In this document: piece after piece, positions 5,804 to 15,808 of the stretch
Position numbering within the stretch: position 1 is the first letter of the stretch
How the letters are laid out: each line of letters opens with the position of its first letter
Source of the DNA: Bigelowiella natans CCMP2755
Lineage: Eukaryota; Protista; Cercozoa
DNA: 64,000 nucleotides
Direction of reading: 5' to 3'
NCBI GenBank assembly: GCA_000320545.1
Contig: ADNK01000544.1
Span: 62,001-126,000 of the forward strand
Program-made: the position numbers and the translations under genes
Notes under the pieces: model-generated
Told to the model about the DNA's origin: nothing
Databases searched by the model: none
What the model saw: the letters and a program-made list of their open reading frames with translations, nothing else

Positions 5804-6550
5804 ATTGCCGCTACTCAGAATAGTTTACCGTTTTCTCTGTTCAATGAACACGAATAATTGTGAGACCGCATGCATGGGTGTAGATTAGGATTTTGGAATT
5901 TTTCGAAGCTCTCCTTAGTCTCTATCATTCTCTCTAGCTTTTGAGACAAGATAAAGTCCATAACACATAAATCCATGCTTGAATAATTCAGTCTACGTAC
6001 GATTTTTCGAAAATAATTCACTCAATCTCTGCACCCCCCCCCCTCTCTCTCTCACTCTCTATCTATCTCTCTTTCTCTCAAAAATGAACACCTTCACACA
6101 TATCCTTGCAGGTATGGGACCGCCACTGCACTCCCGGATGTAATGTTCTGTTTTACCATCTGCGACATATAAGTCCCAAAGACGCTATTGCAAATTCAAG
6201 AGTGTTAAATTTACATGTTGGAAATTGGCGCGCTTCTATTCTTTTTATTATCAGCTGGCGATTATTTGATGATTTTGGTGCAAACAGATGCATTATTGAT
6301 TAGCGACTTTCACCAAATCACTCCACATTGGCAAAAAGGATGAATTGGGGGAAATGTTTGGATATGAGTCGTTCAGGAGGCTGTCGCTCTGTATATTTTG
6401 AAGCTGTTTTCTTCTAAACAACATGTTCCTATTTTAGCCCTACTATTCCTTGGGTAACCGAAACACTGAAATACAACACACACGTGTCCAGAAACGCTTC
6501 ATCAGCCCGGATACAGTAGCCTCTCCTTCCCCGCTGCACTGGCCAGAATT

Positions 6551-8421
6551 ATGACAAGTGCCGGTGGAAACGAAGATGTGGACGCTCTCGATTCTCTGTT
6601 AGAATCACAGGTGATCGATCGATGATTTGTGTGAAAGGGCAAGTAGTAAAGTTGCAGCAATTATTATTTCCTCATCGAACTATCGGATAGTTCCGATATT
6701 ATTCCTCGAGAACAATAGATTTAGTGCCAATGTATTGTTTTACGGTGCATAGGCACTCTATTGAGGTCCTCACATCTTAACATTTCCAGGAATACAAGGA
6801 GCTTACAGAATCTCACAGATGTGTATTCGAATCCTTCGATTCGAGGACGGTGTGTTACAACTATCTTTGAACATCTCATTCGACAAATAATTTTTATTTT
6901 GCAACAGATGTGCCGAGACTATCCTCCTTTTTGGGAGCATGCGCATAAGAAGGTGAATAGTAAATGTGGGGTGCCATTTTGCATACTCTCCCTTAAGATC
7001 GATACCACCTCCTAAGATGCACTTGAAACCGTAATGCACCATTCCAACTTCCAGGCAATGTACAAAGGAGGAACATATATTTCGAATCGCAAGCGAGTCA
7101 ACTTCGTTGGTGGATGTCCTAAACAATACAAAGACTTTAAGTCTAAGATCACTTTCACAAGATGGCGTATGATGGAATTACCGAGATCTCTAAACTGCAA
7201 GCGCCCTCTCAAAACAGATTTAAGGCCCGACCTGTACTCTTATGTTCCAGAAGTAGCTACTGAGAATACAAAAGGCAACCTTGCTGAATTTTATGTCAAC
7301 TTCGCCGACGAAGATCTCTTTAGGTAAGAGAAAATTAAGAATCAGGAACGTTGAAAAGAATACTGGGCAAAAACTGAATTAGAAATAGCTTGGTACAGAA
7401 ATATTCGTAAAAACACACTTTTAAGCAAATCTGATGAGGAGTGACCAAATTTAAGTGCAAAATCTAATTGCAAATATATTTACTTATCATATTCCTGTAG
7501 GAACTACGGATCGAAAGCTTTCGATCAAGATGAAATAATGGTATAACTTCAGCTACCTTCTCGACGTACGTACTCTATGGAACTTCCATCTCACCTAAAT
7601 CTAACCTCAAAGGTATGCGAGCATCCAATTCTCGGAAGTTTGCGCGAAAAATTGATCGCACATCAGAGTGATGCCAGGCTTCTGAACTCATCGATGGTGG
7701 GTTCCATACGAAACTACGGATAACATCGCGGCAAGCTACATATTTCATTTCACAAAGAAGTGCTAAAGTTATACACAAACATATTAGTCCTGTTCAAAAG
7801 ATACGACTTCGTTTCCTCCCCTACTTCAGGTGACCACTCTCTCAGAAGAGCAGATAAAGCAAGAAACTGCATCTCCCGTGTGCGACACGCCTTGCATCAT
7901 ACTAGGAGCAGAACGCCATCTTAAGGCAGTGATATGATCGTGATGAAGATGACGATGATAATGATCATAACGATATAATGATGCTCACTACTTCGATGAT
8001 GCTCACTACCTCGATACTAATTAAGGGAAGCTAATTGTAAAGTATTTGAAAGTGTGTGTGGGATATTTACCTACAAGAGGGACACAAGATTGTTCTGATA
8101 TAATTCTAGTCTAATCACCATCCTCCTCCCCTAGATCCATACGATGCCAAGTAAGGAAAGAGGGATCTCAAAGGGATTATATGGCAAAGAATTTTGTAAC
8201 TTCTTCATGTTCCCATGTTGCCGCAATGGTATTTCACCAAAACCCCCCCCCCCCCCCCGCCCCCCCCACAGGCCTCGCTTCCAGATCTCAAGTACTATCA
8301 AATTGTGAGCAGGTGGAATAGGAAGAGGAGAAAGAAAACAATTATGATCGAAGAGGGCCTTCTTCATTACTTTTCAAAAGCAAAAACGTGTTTCTTTTCT
8401 CTCCATAGCCCCCCTTCCCCT

Positions 8422-8466
<45 letters not shown>

Positions 8467-8815
8467 CGCTCGCTCGCTCCCTGTCAACCGATGGGAGAGT
8501 GTGTGTGTGTGTGTGTGTAAAAGGGTGAGTGCAAGAGAAAAATGCCGATGTTTCGGTTCATTATTTCTTCAAAATTGGTTTGCAATTTAAGATTCGGACA
8601 TCGAGACGATCGAACATCATTTGTATGGCTACTGGGGTTACAGGGAGAGGGGTATTAAGTCTTAGCACCAAATACCACAAGCATCTTCTTGAGTGGCAGT
8701 TTCTCTGCCCTTACACTCCTCCTCTCCCCCGTTGAACATAAACCACCACAATTTATAACAGACCCCGAGTAGTATTAACAGTTAAACTTATAAATTGACA
8801 CCATAGGCTGCACGT

Positions 8816-8878
<63 letters not shown>

Positions 8879-9131
8879 CCATATTACTCACAAACATATA
8901 CGTTATAGGAATATTCTGTGGACGACATTAACCGATTGCTTCGTACTGCTTACACTGCGTTTAGAGCAGCCAAAGCATGCGCTATGGTATTAATAATAAC
9001 TCGAAAATTATTCTGACACAGTATTCAAGATACACGTACTTTTAATTAATTCTCATCCTGAAACAAATAGACAATGGACATTGCAAAGTCCCCTCCTGAT
9101 CCCAAGGCTGAAACAGGTTTTTGGCTCTTTA

Positions 9132-9202
<71 letters not shown>

Positions 9203-9591
9203 TGTGTGTGTAATACTCACTCGTGACGAAAGAAACACCATTTATCCTACTTCCCAATCTTTCACCTCAGGAGAAGGAAAAAAAATAACAATGAAACCCA
9301 GTTGTATATCTACAATCATCCATACTGGCTGCTGGGGCTGTGGTATATATATAATCTTGAAAAACGTATTGTAGATATACAACTACGACACCGTGGAACT
9401 GAGGATATAGTGTTGGGACCAAGTTTATGGCCATGTACCTGATTCTGAAAAATTAATATGGAAAATTAGGATCTTCTGGGGGCAACATCCAAGTCTCATG
9501 TCTTATCCAAACCCTTGCTGCAAGGTGAACGATTATTAACTATCTAATTGTCCTTGATACCATCTGTATTTCAAATTATTATCAGCAGCAG

Positions 9592-9636
<45 letters not shown>

Positions 9637-10365
9637 TGCTAAGATTTTTCGCTGATGTACGTACATCTTGCCATTATATGGTCTTGAATCTGATCGATAG
9701 GTGACTCCTAAGAACTTGCAACAAGCTTTGCAAGGCTATAAGCAGCTGTATGCTCTCACAGAGGTAATAGTTCTCACTTTTCCGTTATATAGAAGCACAC
9801 GGTACATATAAGATTGATTCACCTTATGTTCTAACTATCTATCTTGATGAATCTTTTTGTTGTTGTATATGTTGCGATCGGGTTGGATGGATCTTCCAGC
9901 GATGCAAGCTATATCCTCTATCTTCCTTGATAAAAACTATCCAAGCTCGCAAATACCCTTGGGGTGAAGATATAAACCACCTTCTTGCTGTTCTACTGCC
10001 GCTACGACTATTGCTATTGCTATTACCTCGTCAATACTGATAGCCCCGTGCAATTCACTGACTCCATCGTATTTTCAACTTACATTTCAGTGAATGCGCA
10101 CAGATACATACATACCACCTCCAATGTCTGCTACTACCGCAACCCATAGCAGCCTCATCAAAACTTCCGCCACACCCGCCACAACCAATCGGAAACCAAT
10201 CAAAATTATGGCTATTATTATTTCTACAACTACTACTACTACTACTGCTGCTACTATGGTACAGGCACCTCGCAAATAGCCCGTGAACCACTCATCAAAT
10301 CTCCTGTGAGAAACAAAAAATCCTTGACAGCTACAAGAGGTATGCACAAAGTAGATTATTATCAT

Positions 10366-10411
<46 letters not shown>

Positions 10412-12673
10412 TTTTAAAGCTCAATCACGTTAATTGTTCCATGATCTCTTGAATAATCTGTTCAATTTTGCTCCCCACCTTCTCCTCTCCTTCCGTCGTC
10501 AAATGACTATTTAAAGGAGGGAGGGACAAAAAAGAAGCACAGAGCATGGAGAATAAAGTTGGAGACAACAACATAAAGGCCAAAAGCATCGCAAAGGGCA
10601 TTCCCTATCAATCCCCCCCACCTGGGGCACCATTATCGCTCACATTAGAGGTTGCATCTAGTGCAAGGAACGACTGTTGTATTTAACAGAATTGTAGCAA
10701 CGTTTAAAACAAATGCAAGAGAAATATTATTTTAATTGTTTTGATCCATCTGTTCGTATCTACGCTTAGATATATGATGACGAGGAGGAGGACGACGAAG
10801 ATGACAAAATTAAGAAACAAGAGTCCCCTCAAGAAGAATCAATACCAGAAAAGAAAGGAAAATCTAAAAATAAAGAACCAACGGTAAGATGTGTCATGTG
10901 TGGTCATTATATTTGTTCAATTCGTCGTAAACGTTGGCTGCACTGTATTATTACTTCATTCATTGAAGCTATATTGTCTTGATTTGTGTCAATCTAGGAG
11001 GAGGAGCTGAAAGCCGCCGAGGAAGAAGCAAAGGCCAAAATCTTAGCAGAGAGAAAAGCTCGTCAGCAAGCAAGAATAGAGAAAGAGCGAAAGCGTCAGT
11101 TGCGATTAGCAAAGGGTCCGATTTTCTACTTTTTCAGGCCTGGATCATGGGTATACTTGCATATTCCTTGTCCAGAAAACGCTTTTATAGTTTGTTTCAT
11201 ATGAAGCACAAAAGCATCTTATCGTTAATTTTAGCTCTTTCACCTGATTATGCTACTTCTCGGTGTGCAAGAATTCTCTTAAAGTTTCTTCTCGATGCTG
11301 CAGTATTGATTTTGTGGCCTCCCTAATCATATTACGCGTTGTTGGCTACTGCAACGTTCTATTGTATCATTAGGCGTGCATATGGTCTCTCAGCACTTTC
11401 AAAGTGGGATCTCGTAGCTTTATCTGTGCTGGACAATATATGATGGCAGAAAAGGTCACTGATGAAACTCCCCAACAGAGAGGAAGCATTCTCTCTTTTC
11501 AATAAGTATACCCTCGTCCACTCTTTCTTGTACTGTAATATTATTAGCGCTACTATTTGTATTTGTTTGTTTTATGGTTGGGGACACTGGAGAAGTATGA
11601 TAAAACCCATTTATTTTTGGTCAAATGGCTTTAATAAGGCGCGACTATTTGGAGATAAGGACCGCATGCGGAAGATATTGAAACCAGGGGCTACTCCTGT
11701 AGAAATAAGACAAATTGGGTAATGTCTGTTTCACCACTTTGTCAATCATCCAAATGTAACCAACGTAATGTATTACGTGTATTGGCTGCAATGAGGTCAT
11801 CTTCGTCTAGCTAATCGTTGGTCCTCTCATTGATGCGAAATGTAATAGTAATTTAGCGTATTATTATTATTTAAAGTATTTCTTTGCCTCCTCCTTTTTA
11901 CCAGGCGTCACATCGCTAATGTTGATGCTAAAGTATGGGCTGCACAGATGGAACGAATAGCCATGGAGGTTTCTGCATGCACGCATAAACAAAAGCAGAC
12001 TCACGAATTTATTACTTTGAGTCTAACACGCCATATCATTCTTCCCATTACATCAATATCGATAACCTCAAATATGCGTTGCACGTTGCTCAGAGCCTTA
12101 TGGCAAAATTTGGACAAAGCTTGCACTTGAGAAACAAGTTACTTGCCACCAAAAATGCTGCTTTGGTGTATTCTTGTGTGGATGATGAAGTTTGGGGCAA
12201 CGGTCTCGATTTTCCCTATCAAGACGACCAGAGGTTGTATATATAATGAATATATATTATATGTGCACGCGTGTGTATTATGTGTGTGTTTTCTCCATTT
12301 CTCTAACTGGTAATTATAGCTTGTTTTAGTGATCATCATTGTTCACCTCCATCCAAAGCGAATCTTCCACTTTTGTAATATATCTACATTGACGACGCGC
12401 AATGTGGTTAAGATACTGTGTAGATATTTGATGACGATATAGTTGGTTGTATTTCTAATGATAATCATTATAAAAAGAGCGAAAGATCGGAAGCAATGGA
12501 GAGGAAAGAACACGTTAGGGAAGCTTCTCGAAACAGCCAGAGCCTGGACAAGGTATTACATATATATATATATATATATATATATAAACAACATATGTAA
12601 CTATTTATGAGACACAGCTATTTGAACGTGAGTGTTCTCGAGCTTAAGTTTGATTACGATTCTTCATACTATG

Positions 12674-12706
<33 letters not shown>

Positions 12707-12784
12707 TTGATGTAGTATTGTGTGTGCCGCAGGACGATGTCGTTGCCTGAAAGCGAAGGGGGGAGCACAGTCAAGGTGATACTT

Positions 12785-12822
<38 letters not shown>

Positions 12823-13817
12823 CAGCTTCAACCACCTCATTATACTTCTCATAAGCAAAGTAATAGGAGTTTCTCGAGATAGTACTGATATACGTGCGTT
12901 TGAAGGAAATGCAATTCTCATCATGTTGCATCTGAAACACGCCGTACCACAGGGTTTGGATGACCACTGGATTACGATGGATGAAATCATTGCCTTTTGC
13001 TTTCCAGAGGGTGGGTGTATAAGTGACAGATATAATATCCCTCTTACGATAACTCGTGTGGAACATTGGAGAAATAGTTGTGAGCTCATTTTTATAGGAG
13101 GTGCTTCTATGAATTGCTGCTGTGATTAGGCATTTTATTTCCTGACTCTGTGGATCGATTGTTCATGATATCTGAGCACGGCCCTCTATATCATCTGCAA
13201 ACACGCTTTTCATGCTTCTCTCAGGATACCGTGAGAGAGATGGAGGTATTATGATGATCAAATGGACCAGCTGTCGACGGATATTTAGAATATTCTCTTT
13301 AATTTTGCACCATTATGTGTGTGTGTGTGTGTGTGCGTGTGCGTGTGTGTGCTGATTGTACAAAATCCTTCGTTCGCTTGTTATCGTCGTCAAAGGCGTT
13401 AAGGAAGACAGATGCTTTTGCCAAAAAGTTGTTTGATGGGGCTCTCTTCAGCTATGATGTAAGAAAAGACAATATTCTTTACATTTATACCCGAAATAAA
13501 GAAGAAGGGTGGTTTGTAGGGGCGATGAGGATGAATTTTGATGTACACAATAAGCTTCAATTAAATCTTCGTTGGCCGTTATTTTAAAGGACATTAAAGA
13601 TCTCGATTGGGTTTCTGAGGCTGATAAGATCAAGGTGTGGGGTTATCCTGTAGGAGGCACAATACTATCCAGGCTACTTTATTATCACATAGTAGTAGTA
13701 GTAGTAGTCGTAGAAGTAGTGGTATTACGACGAGAGTTGTTGTAAGCGGGGGGCTGAGGGAGAAGACTTGGCAGTCGTGTGGGGTAGATATAAATTAAAA
13801 CACATCAATTTACCACA

Positions 13818-13867
<50 letters not shown>

Positions 13868-14250
13868 GTTGTGAAGACCCACTGCATATTTTCGGTTAGT
13901 CTCGAAAAGCAGTAGCCCTAAGGGGGGGGGCAAACAACAACGCACTCTTGGCTGATTCCGACATCAAAGCTCTAGCAAGTATTATTTTTCATTAAAGCGA
14001 GACCAAACTACGATTAGAAATTAGTTATTTGTTCCATCGTTTCTCACTAATTCCACCTTCTTACTCGTGATAAACTCTATATCATTACAGCATCTATGCT
14101 GTTCTATGATATATTACGCGTGTTTGAATGTCCGAAGACAATGCCACAGGTAGAATATACCTCTCACCGCCCAAGCTCATACGACAAATACTGATTACGA
14201 ATTAAATTGATAAAAACGTCAACCAATCATACGACGAGAAGACTACTTTC

Positions 14251-14291
<41 letters not shown>

Positions 14292-14596
14292 TCTTCCTTT
14301 TCCACCCATTGAATATCACAAACAAAAACTTTACAACAAAAATGAAATAGGATGAGCAGGAAGAATTTATTCGCTCAATCCCTAAAGAGAAGCGAAGGGT
14401 AAAAAAAAACAAAATAATTGAAGACTAGCACCATGATTAATCAAGAAGATGGAATTTTCTTGTTGTCAAGACACTTATTGATAATATCTGCTGGCGTTAT
14501 TTCCAACAATATACTCTGATTCGATCATCTCTCCCTCTATACACATACAAACACACACACACACACACATATGTTGATATTGATATGGCATTAAAA

Positions 14597-14634
<38 letters not shown>

Positions 14635-15025
14635 GACGTTGCCGGCCATCAGCGACCCAAAATGACGAAAGCGGAGATCACTTCAATTTTCCAATCAGGT
14701 CAGTACACTCTTGCATCTACAGAGTTTTGGTGTTAGTTTACTACATTTTGAATGAGTATGATTTTATCCTTTCTCTCCCCCCTCCTGCATTTGTGGTATC
14801 TCCTTCTACTTTCCTTTAACTATATAGTGCCTAAAGATTCGAAAGGAAAGATGCAATTTGAAGTGTTTAGACAAGTTGTGAGAGAGATCAGGATGGAATG
14901 GATTCAAAAGGTGTTACGAGGGTTATTGTGGTAGTGGTAGTGGTGGTAGTGCTCATGATGGTGATTCTAGCGGAGGGGAAGGACACTGTGTATCTCACGT
15001 CGTAACACGTAAGTTATTATGAATG

Positions 15026-15059
<34 letters not shown>

Positions 15060-15808
15060 CATAATACACGGCTGTGTTGTTTATTATCATGACAGATGAA
15101 GCAGATGTTCCCAGCAGTCAATGCGAAACGGAAACCAGTGCTATCCGGTACTACCATCGCCACGGATATTATTCTCACAATAAATAACACAAATGTACAT
15201 ATTTTATATAAATAGACAAGCATATGAAATAAAGTGCATTTACGTATCGCTGGTTTTAATTGTATTATTTCCTGTACCATAACTTAGGCCATAAATCATC
15301 GAATCTTGCAACGCGCTTGCTGGACAAAAAGGTATAGCATAAACTTCTAAATTTGATTCTCGAAAAGAAATATCTCCTCAACAAGCATTGTTGTTATTAT
15401 ATTTACTGACGTGATAGATTCCGGACACTTTGACGTGGACATTGACGGATAGGCTGATTCACAAAACGATGCACCAAGTCTGACTTACTAGTCTAATTAG
15501 CATGTTCTTCGGACTGAGAGATTCACGAATGCTGTGTAATAATTATTCTCCAATCAAATCAGATGACAGCACTTGAGGCTCATGGGGAAGGGGAGGCAGT
15601 AAAGCAAAATGTGTATCTAATGAGGAATGCTCTTCAAAACAGCGAAACTACATGGGATCAGTAATAGAAAGAGACAACACCATCCCAATTTTCTCTTATA
15701 TCCAGAATTATTAACGATGTTCTTATCAGGTATTGTTGCATTCGACAGTCTCAAACGAAGGCGTCATATGTCAAGAAAAGACGAGCAGACAAGGATCTCA
15801 ATCTGTGA
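6551..15808 (+). CDS. Multi-exon multidomain protein: N-terminal PARG-like (poly(ADP-ribose) glycohydrolase-type macrodomain), charged linker, NADAR (YbiA-like) domain, C-terminal region with a degenerate EF-hand-like segment
   Basis: PARG-like motifs from spliced exons: FYVNFADEDLFR|NYGSKAFDQDEIM|VCEHPILG, TPCIILGAER, GLYGKEF, SNIICMA, LLRTAYTAFRAA, IHTGCWGCG|SSGGN...IQTLAAR. NADAR motifs: PIFYFF, CAGQYMMAEK|ARLFGD, IG|RHIANVDAKVW, AKFGQSLHLRNKLLAT, DDEVWGNG, WRGKNTLGKLLE. The last exons end WDQYCCIRQ...DLNL* at 15808. Joins at about 9964-10264 and 12776-13225 are not fully resolved. Confidence 0.7.
6908..9963 (+). CDS. PARG-like catalytic domain (sub-feature)
   Basis: VNFA...QDE..V.EHP and TG.WGCG..GGN..Q.LAA match the PARG catalytic-fold signatures (canonical VDFAN..GGG..QEE and TGNWGCGAFGG). 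Confidence 0.75.
11114..12552 (+). CDS. NADAR / YbiA-like domain (sub-feature), six exons
   Basis: QYMMAEKARLFGD, AKFGQ...LL.T, D.VWG.G and W.G.N.LG..L are hallmark NADAR motifs. The exon phases join cleanly. Confidence 0.9.

What the first reader, a model, noticed from the sequence alone, without database searches (positions are those of the whole stretch)
6551..12552. Apparent fusion of a PARG-like hydrolase and a NADAR domain: a candidate dual ADP-ribose eraser/reader
Seen in sequence: manual splicing gives a PARG-like domain (VNFAD..QDE..V.EHP; TGCWGCGSSGGN), then a charged or low-complexity linker, then a clear NADAR domain on the same strand. No 3'UTR- or promoter-type sequence lies between them. 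Established: PARG macrodomains hydrolyse poly/mono-ADP-ribose. NADARs are a structurally unrelated fold that includes DarT1 antitoxins removing ADP-ribose from guanine in DNA, and YbiA N-glycosidases. Inference: one intron-rich eukaryotic protein combining both would be an ADP-ribosylation reversal module, possibly for nucleic-acid ADP-ribosylation or defence. I am not aware of a described example.
Basis: partly seen in the sequence, partly recalled or inferred. Interest (0 to 1): 0.85.

Follow-up and report, generated by a model that had tools for sequence, protein, structure and literature searches.

The report
One gene fusing PARG-like and NADAR
In the alga Bigelowiella natans, one 41-exon gene encodes a protein that joins a PARG-type ADP-ribose hydrolase domain, a NADAR domain lacking both catalytic glutamates, and a third conserved domain; this links two unrelated ADP-ribose-removing families in a combination I found nowhere in the papers searched.

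Summary
Spliced RNA contigs from three studies cross the region. One 3268-nt contig runs from the 5' UTR through the PARG-like exons, the linker and the NADAR exons.

The joints give one open frame. Extended with a near-identical database protein, it makes 41 exons (ATG 6551, stop 15806-15808) and 1038 aa. One 33-nt coding exon seen in RNA is missing from the assembly.

Two other eukaryote assemblies carry the same three-domain protein as a single intronless ORF. The public gene model (Bigna1 69777) starts at internal Met447 and hides the fusion.

The N-terminal domain has a PARG fold: Z 17-19.5, and Pfam PARG_cat_C above cut-off on orthologues. It belongs to a mostly bacterial subfamily with an invariant QDE in place of GGG...QEE.

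The NADAR domain scores 116 bits, but both catalytic glutamates are replaced (E43 to G, E125 to Y) in all three sequences checked.

Most likely this is an active PARG-type eraser tethered to a non-catalytic ADP-ribose-binding NADAR. In two bacterial loci the PARG-like gene sits in an NrtR-headed ADP-ribose cluster, one with NADAR. It is a new variant of known kinds, of moderate interest. The scan also noted the glutamate substitutions on this window.

The parts
6551..15808 (+). Coding span of the whole gene: 41 exons (one is not in the assembly), 1038 aa, ATG 6551, stop TGA 15806-15808. Transcript contig lengths imply about 117 nt of 5' UTR (from about 6434) and at least 34 nt of 3' UTR.
   Evidence: Splice joints and contig pieces. 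Frame check. Downstream exons mapped with the near-identical protein P0011. Length bookkeeping: 117 + 3117 + 34 = 3268.
6551..9963 (+). PARG-like macrodomain, aa 1 to about 410. Exons: 6551-6610, 6790-6849, 6908-6952, 7055-7323, 7501-7540, 7613-7696, 7830-7925, 8135-8195, 8272-8312, 8592-8651, 8909-8986, 9071-9116, 9271-9342, 9470-9524, [33-nt exon missing from the assembly], 9700-9763, 9900-9963.
   Evidence: Joints. Family-profile hits exon by exon. Orthologues pass Pfam PARG_cat_C. PARG fold of orthologue P0005:1-420.
7055..7696 (+). Catalytic-loop region over three exons: VNFAD (7055-7323), NYGSKAFDQDEIM (7501-7540), VCEHPILGSLREK (7613-7696). It has the same spacing as canonical F-A-N...GGG...QEE...PE, but GGG is absent and QEE is QDE.
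   Evidence: N, F, Q, D, E, E, H and P are invariant in the 38 family members of A1.
9271..9524 (+). Diphosphate-binding loop motif HTGCWGCG|SSGGNIQVSCLIQTLAA, split by the intron 9343-9469.
   Evidence: aligns to TGNWGCGAFGGD of the genome's canonical PARGs. (profile matches solved PARGs at E 2e-12).
9525..9699 (+). Intron-like gap holding a (TC)n microsatellite. A 33-nt coding exon (encoding ..RLAGIEQLVFHS..) seen in RNA contigs of three studies should lie here, but it is absent from the window and from the whole assembly.
   Evidence: table 5c. (no match with up to 3 and 2 mismatches). The encoded peptide matches orthologues (RLAGVSHLVFHA and RLAGINQLVYHA).
7926..8134 (+). The one non-GT intron, GC..AG.
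   Evidence: joint 7923>8133, two ambiguous letters..
9964..10264 (+). Intron between the PARG-like part and the linker. It is spliced out in the main form. Low-depth unspliced contigs (9958-10293) show a minor retained-intron form that would stop at 10038-10040.
   Evidence: records 2 and 6, depth 8.7 and 9.5 against 89 and 41.5. Frame reading.
10265..11100 (+). Linker, aa about 410-555, in exons 10265-10339, 10517-10650, 10770-10883 and the start of 10998-11150. It contains PPPGAP, an acidic run, a Lys-rich run and a coiled-coil-like EEELKAAEEEAKAK..KERKRQLR. Most of it is an insertion specific to this species. ATG 10546 (Met447) is where the public model Bigna1 69777 starts.
   Evidence: Orthologues P0005 and P0006 pass from PPPGAP..LE to the NADAR domain within about 10 residues.
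11101..12552 (+). NADAR domain, aa about 555-713, in exons 10998-11150 (end), 11374-11454, 11639-11718, 11905-11968, 12094-12233 and 12478-12552. CAGQYMMAEK carries the E43-equivalent as G and keeps K50. LVYSCVDDEVWGNG carries the E125-equivalent as Y and keeps D130 and W133.
   Evidence: Pfam NADAR: 35.7 bits on the single exon 12094-12233 and 116 bits on P0011. Residue mapping to 8BAU and YbiA, with residue roles from PMC11543638.
12733..15808 (+). Third, C-terminal conserved domain, about 320 aa in 15 exons: 12733-12775, 12953-13010, 13130-13245, 13396-13458, 13590-13634, 13900-13978, 14091-14149, 14351-14398, 14653-14698, 14828-14910, 15096-15147, 15288-15331, 15418-15477, 15563-15660, 15730-15808. 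It is helical and only weakly EF-hand-like.
   Evidence: tblastn of P0005 and P0006. Exact mapping of P0011. 56% identity and many invariant columns across three species. Weak EF-hand leads only.

Best explanation
The window is Bigelowiella natans nuclear DNA. Positions 6551-15808 (+) hold one gene of 41 exons for a 1038-aa three-domain protein.

(1) The N-terminal domain has a PARG fold. It belongs to a distinct subfamily whose other members are mostly about 330-aa stand-alone bacterial or metagenomic proteins. The family keeps, as invariant residues, an NF(A/S)D strand, a Q-D-E helix start at the position of canonical Q-E-E, an EHP turn and the TGxWGCGxxGG diphosphate loop. I therefore infer an active ADP-ribosyl glycohydrolase whose substrate is not known.

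(2) After a charged, species-specific linker comes a YbiA-type NADAR domain. The phosphate- and ribose-binding residues K50, R79, W89, D130 and W133 (P. nicotianae numbering) are kept. Both glutamates that hold the distal ribose are replaced (E43 to G, E125 to Y), and the same holds in both full-length orthologues. I infer that it no longer cleaves N-glycosidic ADP-ribose bonds. It more likely acts as an ADP-ribose or ADP-ribosylated-substrate binding module that brings the PARG-type domain to its substrate.

(3) A conserved helical C-terminal domain of unknown role may be a degenerate EF-hand module.

Shown: one mRNA, one frame, conserved architecture, the fold, and the residue states. Inferred: activity of the PARG-like domain, loss of activity of the NADAR domain, and a substrate in the area of free or nucleic-acid-linked ADP-ribose. 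The substrate inference rests on bacterial loci where the PARG-like gene lies with NrtR, KptA/Tpt1, ARH, Macro, NADAR, NAPRTase or RtcA/RtcB.
For: **One transcript.** X5 record 9 is a single 3268-nt contig with pieces on both sides of the junction (7053-7923 and 10515-12231). Its internal length, 650 nt between 7923 and 10515, equals the sum of the exons exactly. In X1 the two half-contigs overlap at 10264-10293.

**One frame.** The frame is open from ATG 6551 through all joints to 15808.

**Conserved architecture.** P0005/P0010 (920 aa) and P0006 (826 aa) are single intronless ORFs in two NCBI eukaryote assemblies. Both carry PARG_cat_C at 36-37 bits (cut-off 26.3) and NADAR at 98-108 bits. 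The four fusion proteins form one clade with SH-aLRT 100.

**Fold.** The model has pLDDT 84.8. All of the top 49 Foldseek hits are PARGs (E 5e-10). VIA Z is 19.5-16.7 for PARGs against about 12 for generic macrodomains.

**Conserved active-site-like residues.** Shown.

**NADAR residue mapping.** Shown, with residue roles from PMC11543638. The stand-alone NADAR paralogue on contig C2878 keeps both glutamates.

**Bacterial contexts.**

**Single locus in the genome.**
Against: - No biochemical data exist for any member.
- The fold and Pfam tests were run on orthologues about 50-57% identical, not on the window's own joined protein, which has no reference.
- The first catalytic glutamate of canonical PARG is Asp here and the GGG loop is absent, so activity or specificity may differ or be lost.
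- The E125-equivalent position varies between active NADAR subfamilies (Glu, Asp, His). E88A in E. coli C7 NADAR had only a minor effect in vitro (PMC11543638). Loss of NADAR activity is therefore not proven.
- Three of seven bacterial contexts show no ADP-ribose genes.
- The Logan runs are only guessed to be RNA, although their GT..AG joints argue for RNA. The one certain RNA-seq run (X21) laid only 20 reads and no countable joint.
- A minor unspliced form across 9964-10264 exists.
Confidence: 0.6

Rival explanations
1. These are two separate genes, as in the public annotation. One would be a PARG-like gene ending near 10.0-10.3 kb. The other would be a NADAR-plus-C-terminal-domain gene starting at Met447 (ATG 10546). 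The spanning contigs would then be read-through or assembly chimeras.
For: The JGI model Bigna1 69777 (P0012) and P0011 start at MENKVGD. Low-depth unspliced contigs cover 9958-10293. X1 assembles the two halves as separate contigs at different depths, 89 against 132.
Against: The X1 halves overlap by k-1 at 10264-10293. They are broken only where the low-depth unspliced branch joins. X5 gives one contig. The depth ratio reverses in X13 (41.5 against 24-33). The frame stays open across four junction exons. Orthologues have the same order in single intronless ORFs. The linker motif PPPGAP..TLE, which lies upstream of the NADAR domain, is conserved in those ORFs.
Confidence: 0.05
2. It is a true dual eraser. 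Both domains would be catalytically active, with the NADAR domain using non-canonical residues (for example the conserved Tyr, or D130) to cleave a base-linked or other ADP-ribose bond. The two activities would be complementary, as reported separately for PARG (2'-OH RNA ADPr, PAR) and NADAR (guanine ADPr).
For: The NADAR domain is well conserved: 116 bits, with the WGNGLDFPYQDD block identical in three species. The catalytic position differs among active subfamilies (Glu, Asp, His; PMC11125620). PARG and NADAR have complementary nucleic-acid activities (PMC11833690).
Against: Both ribose-coordinating glutamates are missing, and Y84, D86 and R93 are also changed. Substitutions at the E125-equivalent position abolished activity in the tested enzyme (PMC11543638). 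The genome keeps a separate NADAR with both glutamates.
Confidence: 0.2
3. It is a non-enzymatic scaffold or reader. Both ADP-ribose domains would be pseudo-enzymes that only bind ADP-ribose or PAR, with the output coming from the C-terminal domain.
For: The canonical PARG signature GGG-X-QEE is not met. The NADAR glutamates are lost. A large conserved third domain exists.
Against: QDE, EHP and the diphosphate loop are invariant across 38 family members, including stand-alone bacterial proteins that sit among ADP-ribose hydrolase genes. That pattern is expected of an enzyme. The key second Glu of QEE is retained.
Confidence: 0.12

Closest known systems
Canonical eukaryotic PARG (human, mouse, Tetrahymena; Pfam PF05028; PDB 4B1H, 4EPQ)
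   Same: The fold is the same over about 273 residues (Z 17-19.5, rmsd about 3 A). The TGxWGCGxxGG diphosphate loop is shared. The strand-loop-helix arrangement has the same spacing from F-A-[ND] to Q-x-E and to the following Pro. The second Glu of QEE is kept.
   Different: There is no GGG. QEE is QDE and FAN is FAD. Sequence similarity is detectable only in the C-terminal half. The nearest relatives are about 330-aa bacterial or metagenomic proteins, not eukaryotic PARGs. B. natans has separate canonical PARG loci on four other contigs.
Bacterial-type PARG (DUF2263, PF10021; T. curvata 3SIG, D. radiodurans 5ZDB)
   Same: It has a PARG-type macrodomain (Z 15.7-16.9). In two bacterial loci a PF10021 gene lies in the same cluster as the PARG-like family.
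   Different: It is a different Pfam family. It is shorter, lacks the N-terminal extension, and has the GGG..QEE signature.
YbiA-type NADAR (P. nicotianae NADAR 8BAU; E. coli YbiA 2B3W)
   Same: It has a clear NADAR domain (116 bits). The best solved match is 8BAU (E 1.5e-13). K50, R79, W89, D130, W133 and the C-terminal GKNxLG..L..R motif are kept.
   Different: E43 is G and E125 is Y. In addition Y84 is V, D86 is A and R93 is M. The domain is embedded in a 1038-aa multidomain protein rather than standing alone.
DarTG1 (DarT1 toxin with a BC4488-type NADAR antitoxin)
   Same: It contains a NADAR domain from an ADP-ribose reversal family.
   Different: There is no Asp or Glu at the catalytic position. 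A search for DarT in the genome found nothing, but its control was silent. This is a eukaryotic nuclear gene, not an operon.
NrtR-headed ADP-ribose/NAD gene clusters in Verrucomicrobia-like bacteria (L019, L024), and the NADAR, Macro, KptA and Nudix associations predicted by de Souza and Aravind (cited in PMC9503650)
   Same: The same PARG-like subfamily lies beside NADAR, ARH, Macro, KptA/Tpt1, PARG_cat_microb, NAPRTase and PncA-like genes. The eukaryotic fusion joins two members of such a neighbourhood in one chain.
   Different: In bacteria these are separate genes, and the neighbouring NADAR is canonical (188.9 bits). The fusion and the third domain were seen only in eukaryotes.

Membership tests
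PARG (PF05028 / canonical PARG) | PARG-type macrodomain fold | tested here: met
   Tested on orthologue P0005:1-420, which is 45-55% identical to the window protein. Model pLDDT 84.8. Foldseek: top 49 hits all PARGs, E 5e-10. VIA: Z 19.5 (4epq) and 17-18 (human and mouse) over about 273 residues. The window's own joined protein was not folded because it has no reference.
PARG (PF05028 / canonical PARG) | Pfam PARG_cat_C score above the gathering cut-off | tested here: inconclusive
   Met for orthologues P0001, P0005, P0006 and P0034 (36-38 bits against 26.3). Single exons of the window give no Pfam hit. A profile of the subfamily hits the window's exons (53.8 bits for 7016-7324, eleven colinear hits).
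PARG (PF05028 / canonical PARG) | Catalytic signature GGG-X6-8-QEE | tested here: not met
   The window has FADEDLFRNYGSKAFDQDEIM. There is no GGG and QEE is QDE. The same holds in all 38 family members. The second Glu is present.
PARG (PF05028 / canonical PARG) | Diphosphate-binding loop TGNWGCGAFGGD | tested here: met
   HTGCWGCGSSGGN at 9271-9342 and 9470-9524. It aligns to the canonical PARGs of the same genome and to solved PARGs.
PARG (PF05028 / canonical PARG) | Hydrolysis of poly(ADP-ribose) | not testable with these tools
   Needs an enzyme assay.
NADAR (PF08719) | Pfam NADAR score above the gathering cut-off | tested here: met
   The exon translation window:11989-12243 scores 35.7 bits against 35.1. 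P0011, which differs from the window's protein by 2 residues, scores 116 bits, E 2.6e-33.
NADAR (PF08719) | Catalytic and ribose-coordinating residues E43, K50 and E125 (P. nicotianae numbering; E88, K95 and D171 in E. coli C7) | tested here: not met
   E43 is G, K50 is kept, E125 is Y. The same holds in P0005 and P0006. The paralogue on C2878 keeps both Glu.
NADAR (PF08719) | Guanine-ADPr (or other N-glycoside) hydrolysis | not testable with these tools
   Needs an enzyme assay.
DarTG1 antitoxin-type NADAR | Genetic link to a DarT1 ADP-ribosyltransferase | tested here: inconclusive
   No PF14487 match in the 91-Mb assembly. The control genomes also gave nothing, so the search has no shown power. 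No ART gene was sought in the flanks.
EF-hand (for the C-terminal domain) | Pfam EF-hand score above cut-off, or a confident EF-hand fold | tested here: not met
   EF-hand_7 scores 17.1 bits against 30. The model has pLDDT 55. The best Foldseek E is 0.3, although most weak hits are EF-hand proteins. Atlas feature scores are about 0.8.

The most novel reading that the evidence does not exclude
This may be a conserved eukaryotic protein in which a catalytically dead NADAR has become an ADP-ribose (or ADP-ribosylated nucleic acid) reader. It would be the first NADAR pseudo-enzyme or reader, and the first physical coupling of the macrodomain and NADAR eraser superfamilies. The pairing would descend from a bacterial NrtR-regulated ADP-ribose-processing and RNA-repair neighbourhood.
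Probability: 0.3. Interest if true: 0.7.

Novelty: new variant of a known kind. Interest (0 to 1): 0.55.

Why it matters
The physiological role of eukaryotic NADARs is stated to be unknown (PMC11125620). PARG-type and NADAR enzymes were recently shown to reverse different nucleic-acid ADP-ribose marks (PMC11833690).

A natural, conserved fusion of the two folds, backed by gene neighbourhood in bacteria, suggests that they act in one pathway. It also gives a concrete protein to test.

The fusion defines a PARG subfamily (QDE, no GGG) whose activity is unexplored. It offers a candidate non-catalytic NADAR.

On the practical side, it corrects the B. natans annotation: the gene model is split or truncated, and one coding exon is missing from the assembly.

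Tried and rejected
- **Pfam on single exons of the PARG-like part.** No hits. The exons are too short, so this says nothing against homology.
- **phmmer of two exons against PDB.** Only noise and low-complexity hits.
- **tblastn and phmmer of the genome's canonical PARG and NADAR paralogues against the region.** Only the TGxWGCG and NADAR motifs align, so the gene is not a recent paralogue.
- **hhalign of the family profile against the genome's canonical PARG.** Only the C-terminal half aligns (95% probability). The catalytic-loop correspondence therefore rests on spacing and the fold match, not on a residue-level structural alignment.
- **The 33-nt RNA-only exon.** Not found in the window or the genome.
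- **The representative search.** It gave one spurious repeat protein, P0002, which I discarded.
- **C-terminal domain.** The AlphaFold model is poor (pLDDT 55), Foldseek gave nothing significant, and Atlas features scored about 0.8. No fold is assigned.
- **Identity of assemblies GCA_014466315.1 and GCA_014466275.1.** Not resolved. There was no paper hit, and cluster look-ups carry no names.
A PF01661 search gave no hit on the NADAR contig C2878. I did not pursue it further.
- **DarT search.** No match, but the control was silent.
- **Joined protein.** The joined 1038-aa protein has no reference, so it was not sent to any database, family, fold or paper tool. It was used only inside local scripts on the window's own file, for the frame check, a local hmmsearch with the A1 profile, and the tree.

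Full report
**What is there**

The region is intron-rich eukaryotic DNA with (TC)n, (CA)n and (TA)n microsatellites in the introns. Pfam recognises one of them, 11989-12243, as NADAR (35.7 bits, cut-off 35.1). Pfam finds nothing in the short PARG-like fragments. A genome-wide PARG_cat_C search hits four other contigs but not this window.

**One transcript**

About a quarter of the words of 6551-12552 are held by contig sets of seven studies of one organism. That share is what a spliced mRNA would give. I laid four runs on 6610-12609.

- All fifteen listed joints are GT..AG, apart from one GC..AG and one with extra letters between its sides.
- In run X5 a single 3268-nt contig has pieces at 7053-7923 and at 10515-12231.
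- The 650 contig letters between 7923 and 10515 equal the summed exon lengths exactly.
- In run X1 the 5' and 3' halves are separate contigs that overlap at 10264-10293. They break only where a low-depth (8.7 against 89-132) unspliced branch covering 9979-10293 joins.
- The certain RNA-seq run X21 laid only 20 reads.

The runs are only guessed to be RNA, but the canonical splice joints argue for it.

**One frame**

Joining the exons in a local script gives an open frame from ATG 6551 (in-frame stop at 6467-6469) through the junction exons 9900-9963, 10265-10339 and 10517-10650 into the NADAR exons.

The 33 letters that all three contig sets carry between 9524 and 9700 are absent from the window and from the whole assembly. 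They encode ..RLAGIEQLVFHS.., which matches the orthologues. A real coding exon has therefore been lost from the assembly, probably at the (TC)n repeat.

**Identity and true extent**

The 89-aa exon 7055-7321 was searched by reference against 1.84 billion representatives. It found P0001 (Lotharella globosa, 57% identical) and two bacterial-type relatives.

Searches seeded with P0001 and then P0005 found four further proteins:
- P0005 (920 aa) and P0006 (826 aa), both with PF05028 and PF08719.
- P0012, which is jgi/Bigna1/69777.
- P0011.

P0012 is identical to my translation from Met447 (ATG 10546). P0011 differs by two residues. The window is therefore Bigelowiella natans, and the public model starts inside the gene.

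P0005, P0006 and P0011 continue about 320 aa beyond the NADAR domain. These residues map to 15 further exons, up to a TGA at 15806-15808. Position 12552 is a splice donor, not the gene's end. The full product has 1038 aa in 41 exons. A 117-nt 5' UTR, a 3117-nt CDS and 34 nt of 3' UTR add up to the 3268-nt contig length.

**Conservation of the architecture**

P0010 (same cluster as P0005) and P0006 are single intronless ORFs in gene-dense contigs of two NCBI eukaryote assemblies, GCA_014466315.1 and GCA_014466275.1. I could not name these assemblies.

Both proteins pass Pfam for NADAR (108 and 98 bits) and for PARG_cat_C (36.4 and 37.3 bits, cut-off 26.3). Their linker is short. The acidic, Lys-rich, coiled-coil stretch in the window is an insertion specific to this species.

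In a quick maximum-likelihood tree the four fusion proteins form one clade (SH-aLRT 100). That clade is sister to another eukaryotic protein, P0034. The remaining 34 rows are metagenomic or bacterial. The root was placed at the midpoint for drawing only, and the careful tree search did not finish.

**The PARG-like domain**

P0005:1-420 finds 64 relatives, nearly all 305-350 aa, and all carry PF05028. One of them is named as Prosthecobacter.

In an alignment of 38 members the invariant residues include N139, F140, Q156, D157, E158, E163, H164, P165, T318, G319, W321, G322, G324 and G328.

The profile matches solved PARGs at E 2e-12, but only over its C-terminal half. hhalign against the genome's own canonical PARG behaves the same way.

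An AlphaFold model made with this alignment has pLDDT 84.8 and pTM 0.86. All of Foldseek's top 49 PDB hits are PARGs. VIA-align gives the following:
- Z 19.5 to Tetrahymena PARG.
- Z 17-18 to human and mouse PARG, with model residues 33-394 on human 619-953 at about 3 A.
- Z 16.9 to T. curvata PARG.
- Z about 12 to ordinary macrodomains.

The motif FAD-x13-QDE-x4-EHP has nearly the same spacing as canonical motifs such as FSSN-x14-QEE-x6-PE in the genome's own PARG. The GGG is missing and the first Glu is Asp.

The family profile, which excludes the window, places its eleven best window hits colinearly on + strand ORFs between 6725 and 10037. It finds only this locus in the genome at E 5e-13.

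**The NADAR domain**

P0011 scores 116 bits. Its best solved relatives are P. nicotianae NADAR 8BAU (E 1.5e-13) and E. coli YbiA.

The chain numbering of 8BAU is the paper's numbering plus two. I checked this on ten named residues. Using it with the residue roles from PMC11543638 gives:

| Residue (P. nicotianae) | State in the window |
|---|---|
| E43 | G |
| K50 | kept |
| K75 | R |
| R79 | kept |
| Y84 | V |
| D86 | A |
| W89 | kept |
| R93 | M |
| E125 | Y |
| D130 | kept |
| W133 | kept |

P0005 (CAGQYLM, LVYAS) and P0006 (CAGQYIM, FVYSS) show the same G and Y. The stand-alone NADAR paralogue on contig C2878 keeps both glutamates (CCEQY, IIAEAS).

This agrees with the scan's separate note on this window, s1-739207. 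Loss of canonical catalysis is an inference. The E125-equivalent position is Glu, Asp or His in active subfamilies, and E88A was only mildly defective in vitro.

**The third domain**

It is 56% identical across three species, with many invariant columns. The model is poor (pLDDT 55).

Three leads all point towards a degenerate EF-hand-like module, but none is significant:
- Atlas features score about 0.8.
- Foldseek E values are 0.3-1.5, with most hits being EF-hand proteins.
- Pfam EF-hand_7 scores 17 bits against a cut-off of 30.

**Functional context**

I looked at seven bacterial or metagenomic loci that carry the stand-alone PARG-like gene.

- One Prosthecobacter locus reads NrtR, PARG_cat_microb, NADAR (188.9 bits), ARH, PARG-like, ARH, DUF1152, KptA/Tpt1, an unassigned gene, Macro, two unassigned genes, NAPRTase.
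- A second reads NrtR, PARG_cat_microb, PARG-like, KptA, two unassigned genes, ARH, ARH, NAPRTase, isochorismatase.
- A third has the gene next to RtcA and RtcB.
- A fourth has a sub-threshold gp30.3/NADAR-like neighbour.
- Three show nothing related.

This supports a role in processing ADP-ribose derivatives linked to NAD salvage or RNA repair. It also shows the PARG-like and NADAR pairing as separate neighbouring genes in at least one bacterium. It does not support a DarT1 link. The DarT search found nothing, but its control was silent.

**Literature**

Full-text searches for NADAR with PARG found no report of such a fusion.
- The 2014 survey of PAR systems that included B. natans lists PARGs with extra domains but none with NADAR.
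- PMC11833690 shows that PARGs and NADARs reverse different RNA ADP-ribose marks.
- PMC9503650 notes co-occurrence of Macro and NADAR in DNA viruses.

**Verdict**

The PARG fold is confirmed on an orthologue (about 0.95).

The best mechanistic reading is an active, non-canonical PARG-type hydrolase tethered to a NADAR that binds but does not cleave, plus an unknown third module. I put this whole statement at 0.6. It is a new domain architecture built from known families: a new variant of known kinds, of moderate interest.

**Limits**

The joined protein has no reference, so it was not sent to any search or fold tool. Fold and Pfam tests used database orthologues by id. The joined sequence was used only in local scripts.

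Noticed in passing
window 9525-9699: A 33-nt coding exon is present in RNA contigs of three studies. It is absent from the window and from the whole 91-Mb assembly. The gap holds a (TC)n microsatellite, so this is a likely assembly collapse or deletion.
   Followed up: yes
window 10546 onward (P0012 = jgi/Bigna1/69777; P0011): The public B. natans gene model starts at internal Met447. In P0012 it also reads through several introns (for example 12553-12950) and skips the exon 15418-15477. The PARG-like half had no model in the protein collections searched.
   Followed up: yes
window 7926-8134: One GC..AG intron among about 39 GT..AG introns of the gene.
   Followed up: partly
window 9958-10293: Low-depth unspliced contigs lie across the intron between the PARG-like part and the linker, at about 10-23% of the spliced depth. 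This retained-intron form would end the frame at 10038-10040 and give a PARG-like-only product.
   Followed up: partly
G000 contigs C564:49910-50449, C2351:9997-10665, C478:46203-47764, C3094:38950-40330 (L001-L008): Four other loci match canonical PARG_cat_C. The one on C564 has a GSGCGQEE signature. B. natans therefore has canonical PARGs besides the fusion.
   Followed up: partly
G000 C2878:5846-6570 (L009): A stand-alone NADAR paralogue (71.6 bits) keeps both catalytic glutamates. An earlier scan note (s1-716076) reports a NADAR plus TARG1-like macrodomain pair elsewhere in this genome.
   Followed up: partly
L019:1970-11032 (Prosthecobacter sp., GCA_044222565.1) and L024:3482-10542: These are NrtR-headed clusters that pack PARG_cat_microb, NADAR, two ARH genes, the PARG-like gene, DUF1152, KptA/Tpt1, Macro, NAPRTase and isochorismatase. 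They form dense ADP-ribose and NAD-salvage gene sets that may merit their own study.
   Followed up: partly
L017 and L018 (GCA_014466315.1, GCA_014466275.1): Two unnamed, gene-dense, apparently intron-poor eukaryote assemblies carry the three-domain gene as one ORF. The organisms were not identified.
   Followed up: partly
window 12644-13089, minus strand: Two mechanical ORFs of 140-141 aa lie on the minus strand and overlap the introns and exons of the gene's C-terminal part. They run through (TA)n and poly-His or poly-Ile repeats and are probably not genes.
   Followed up: no
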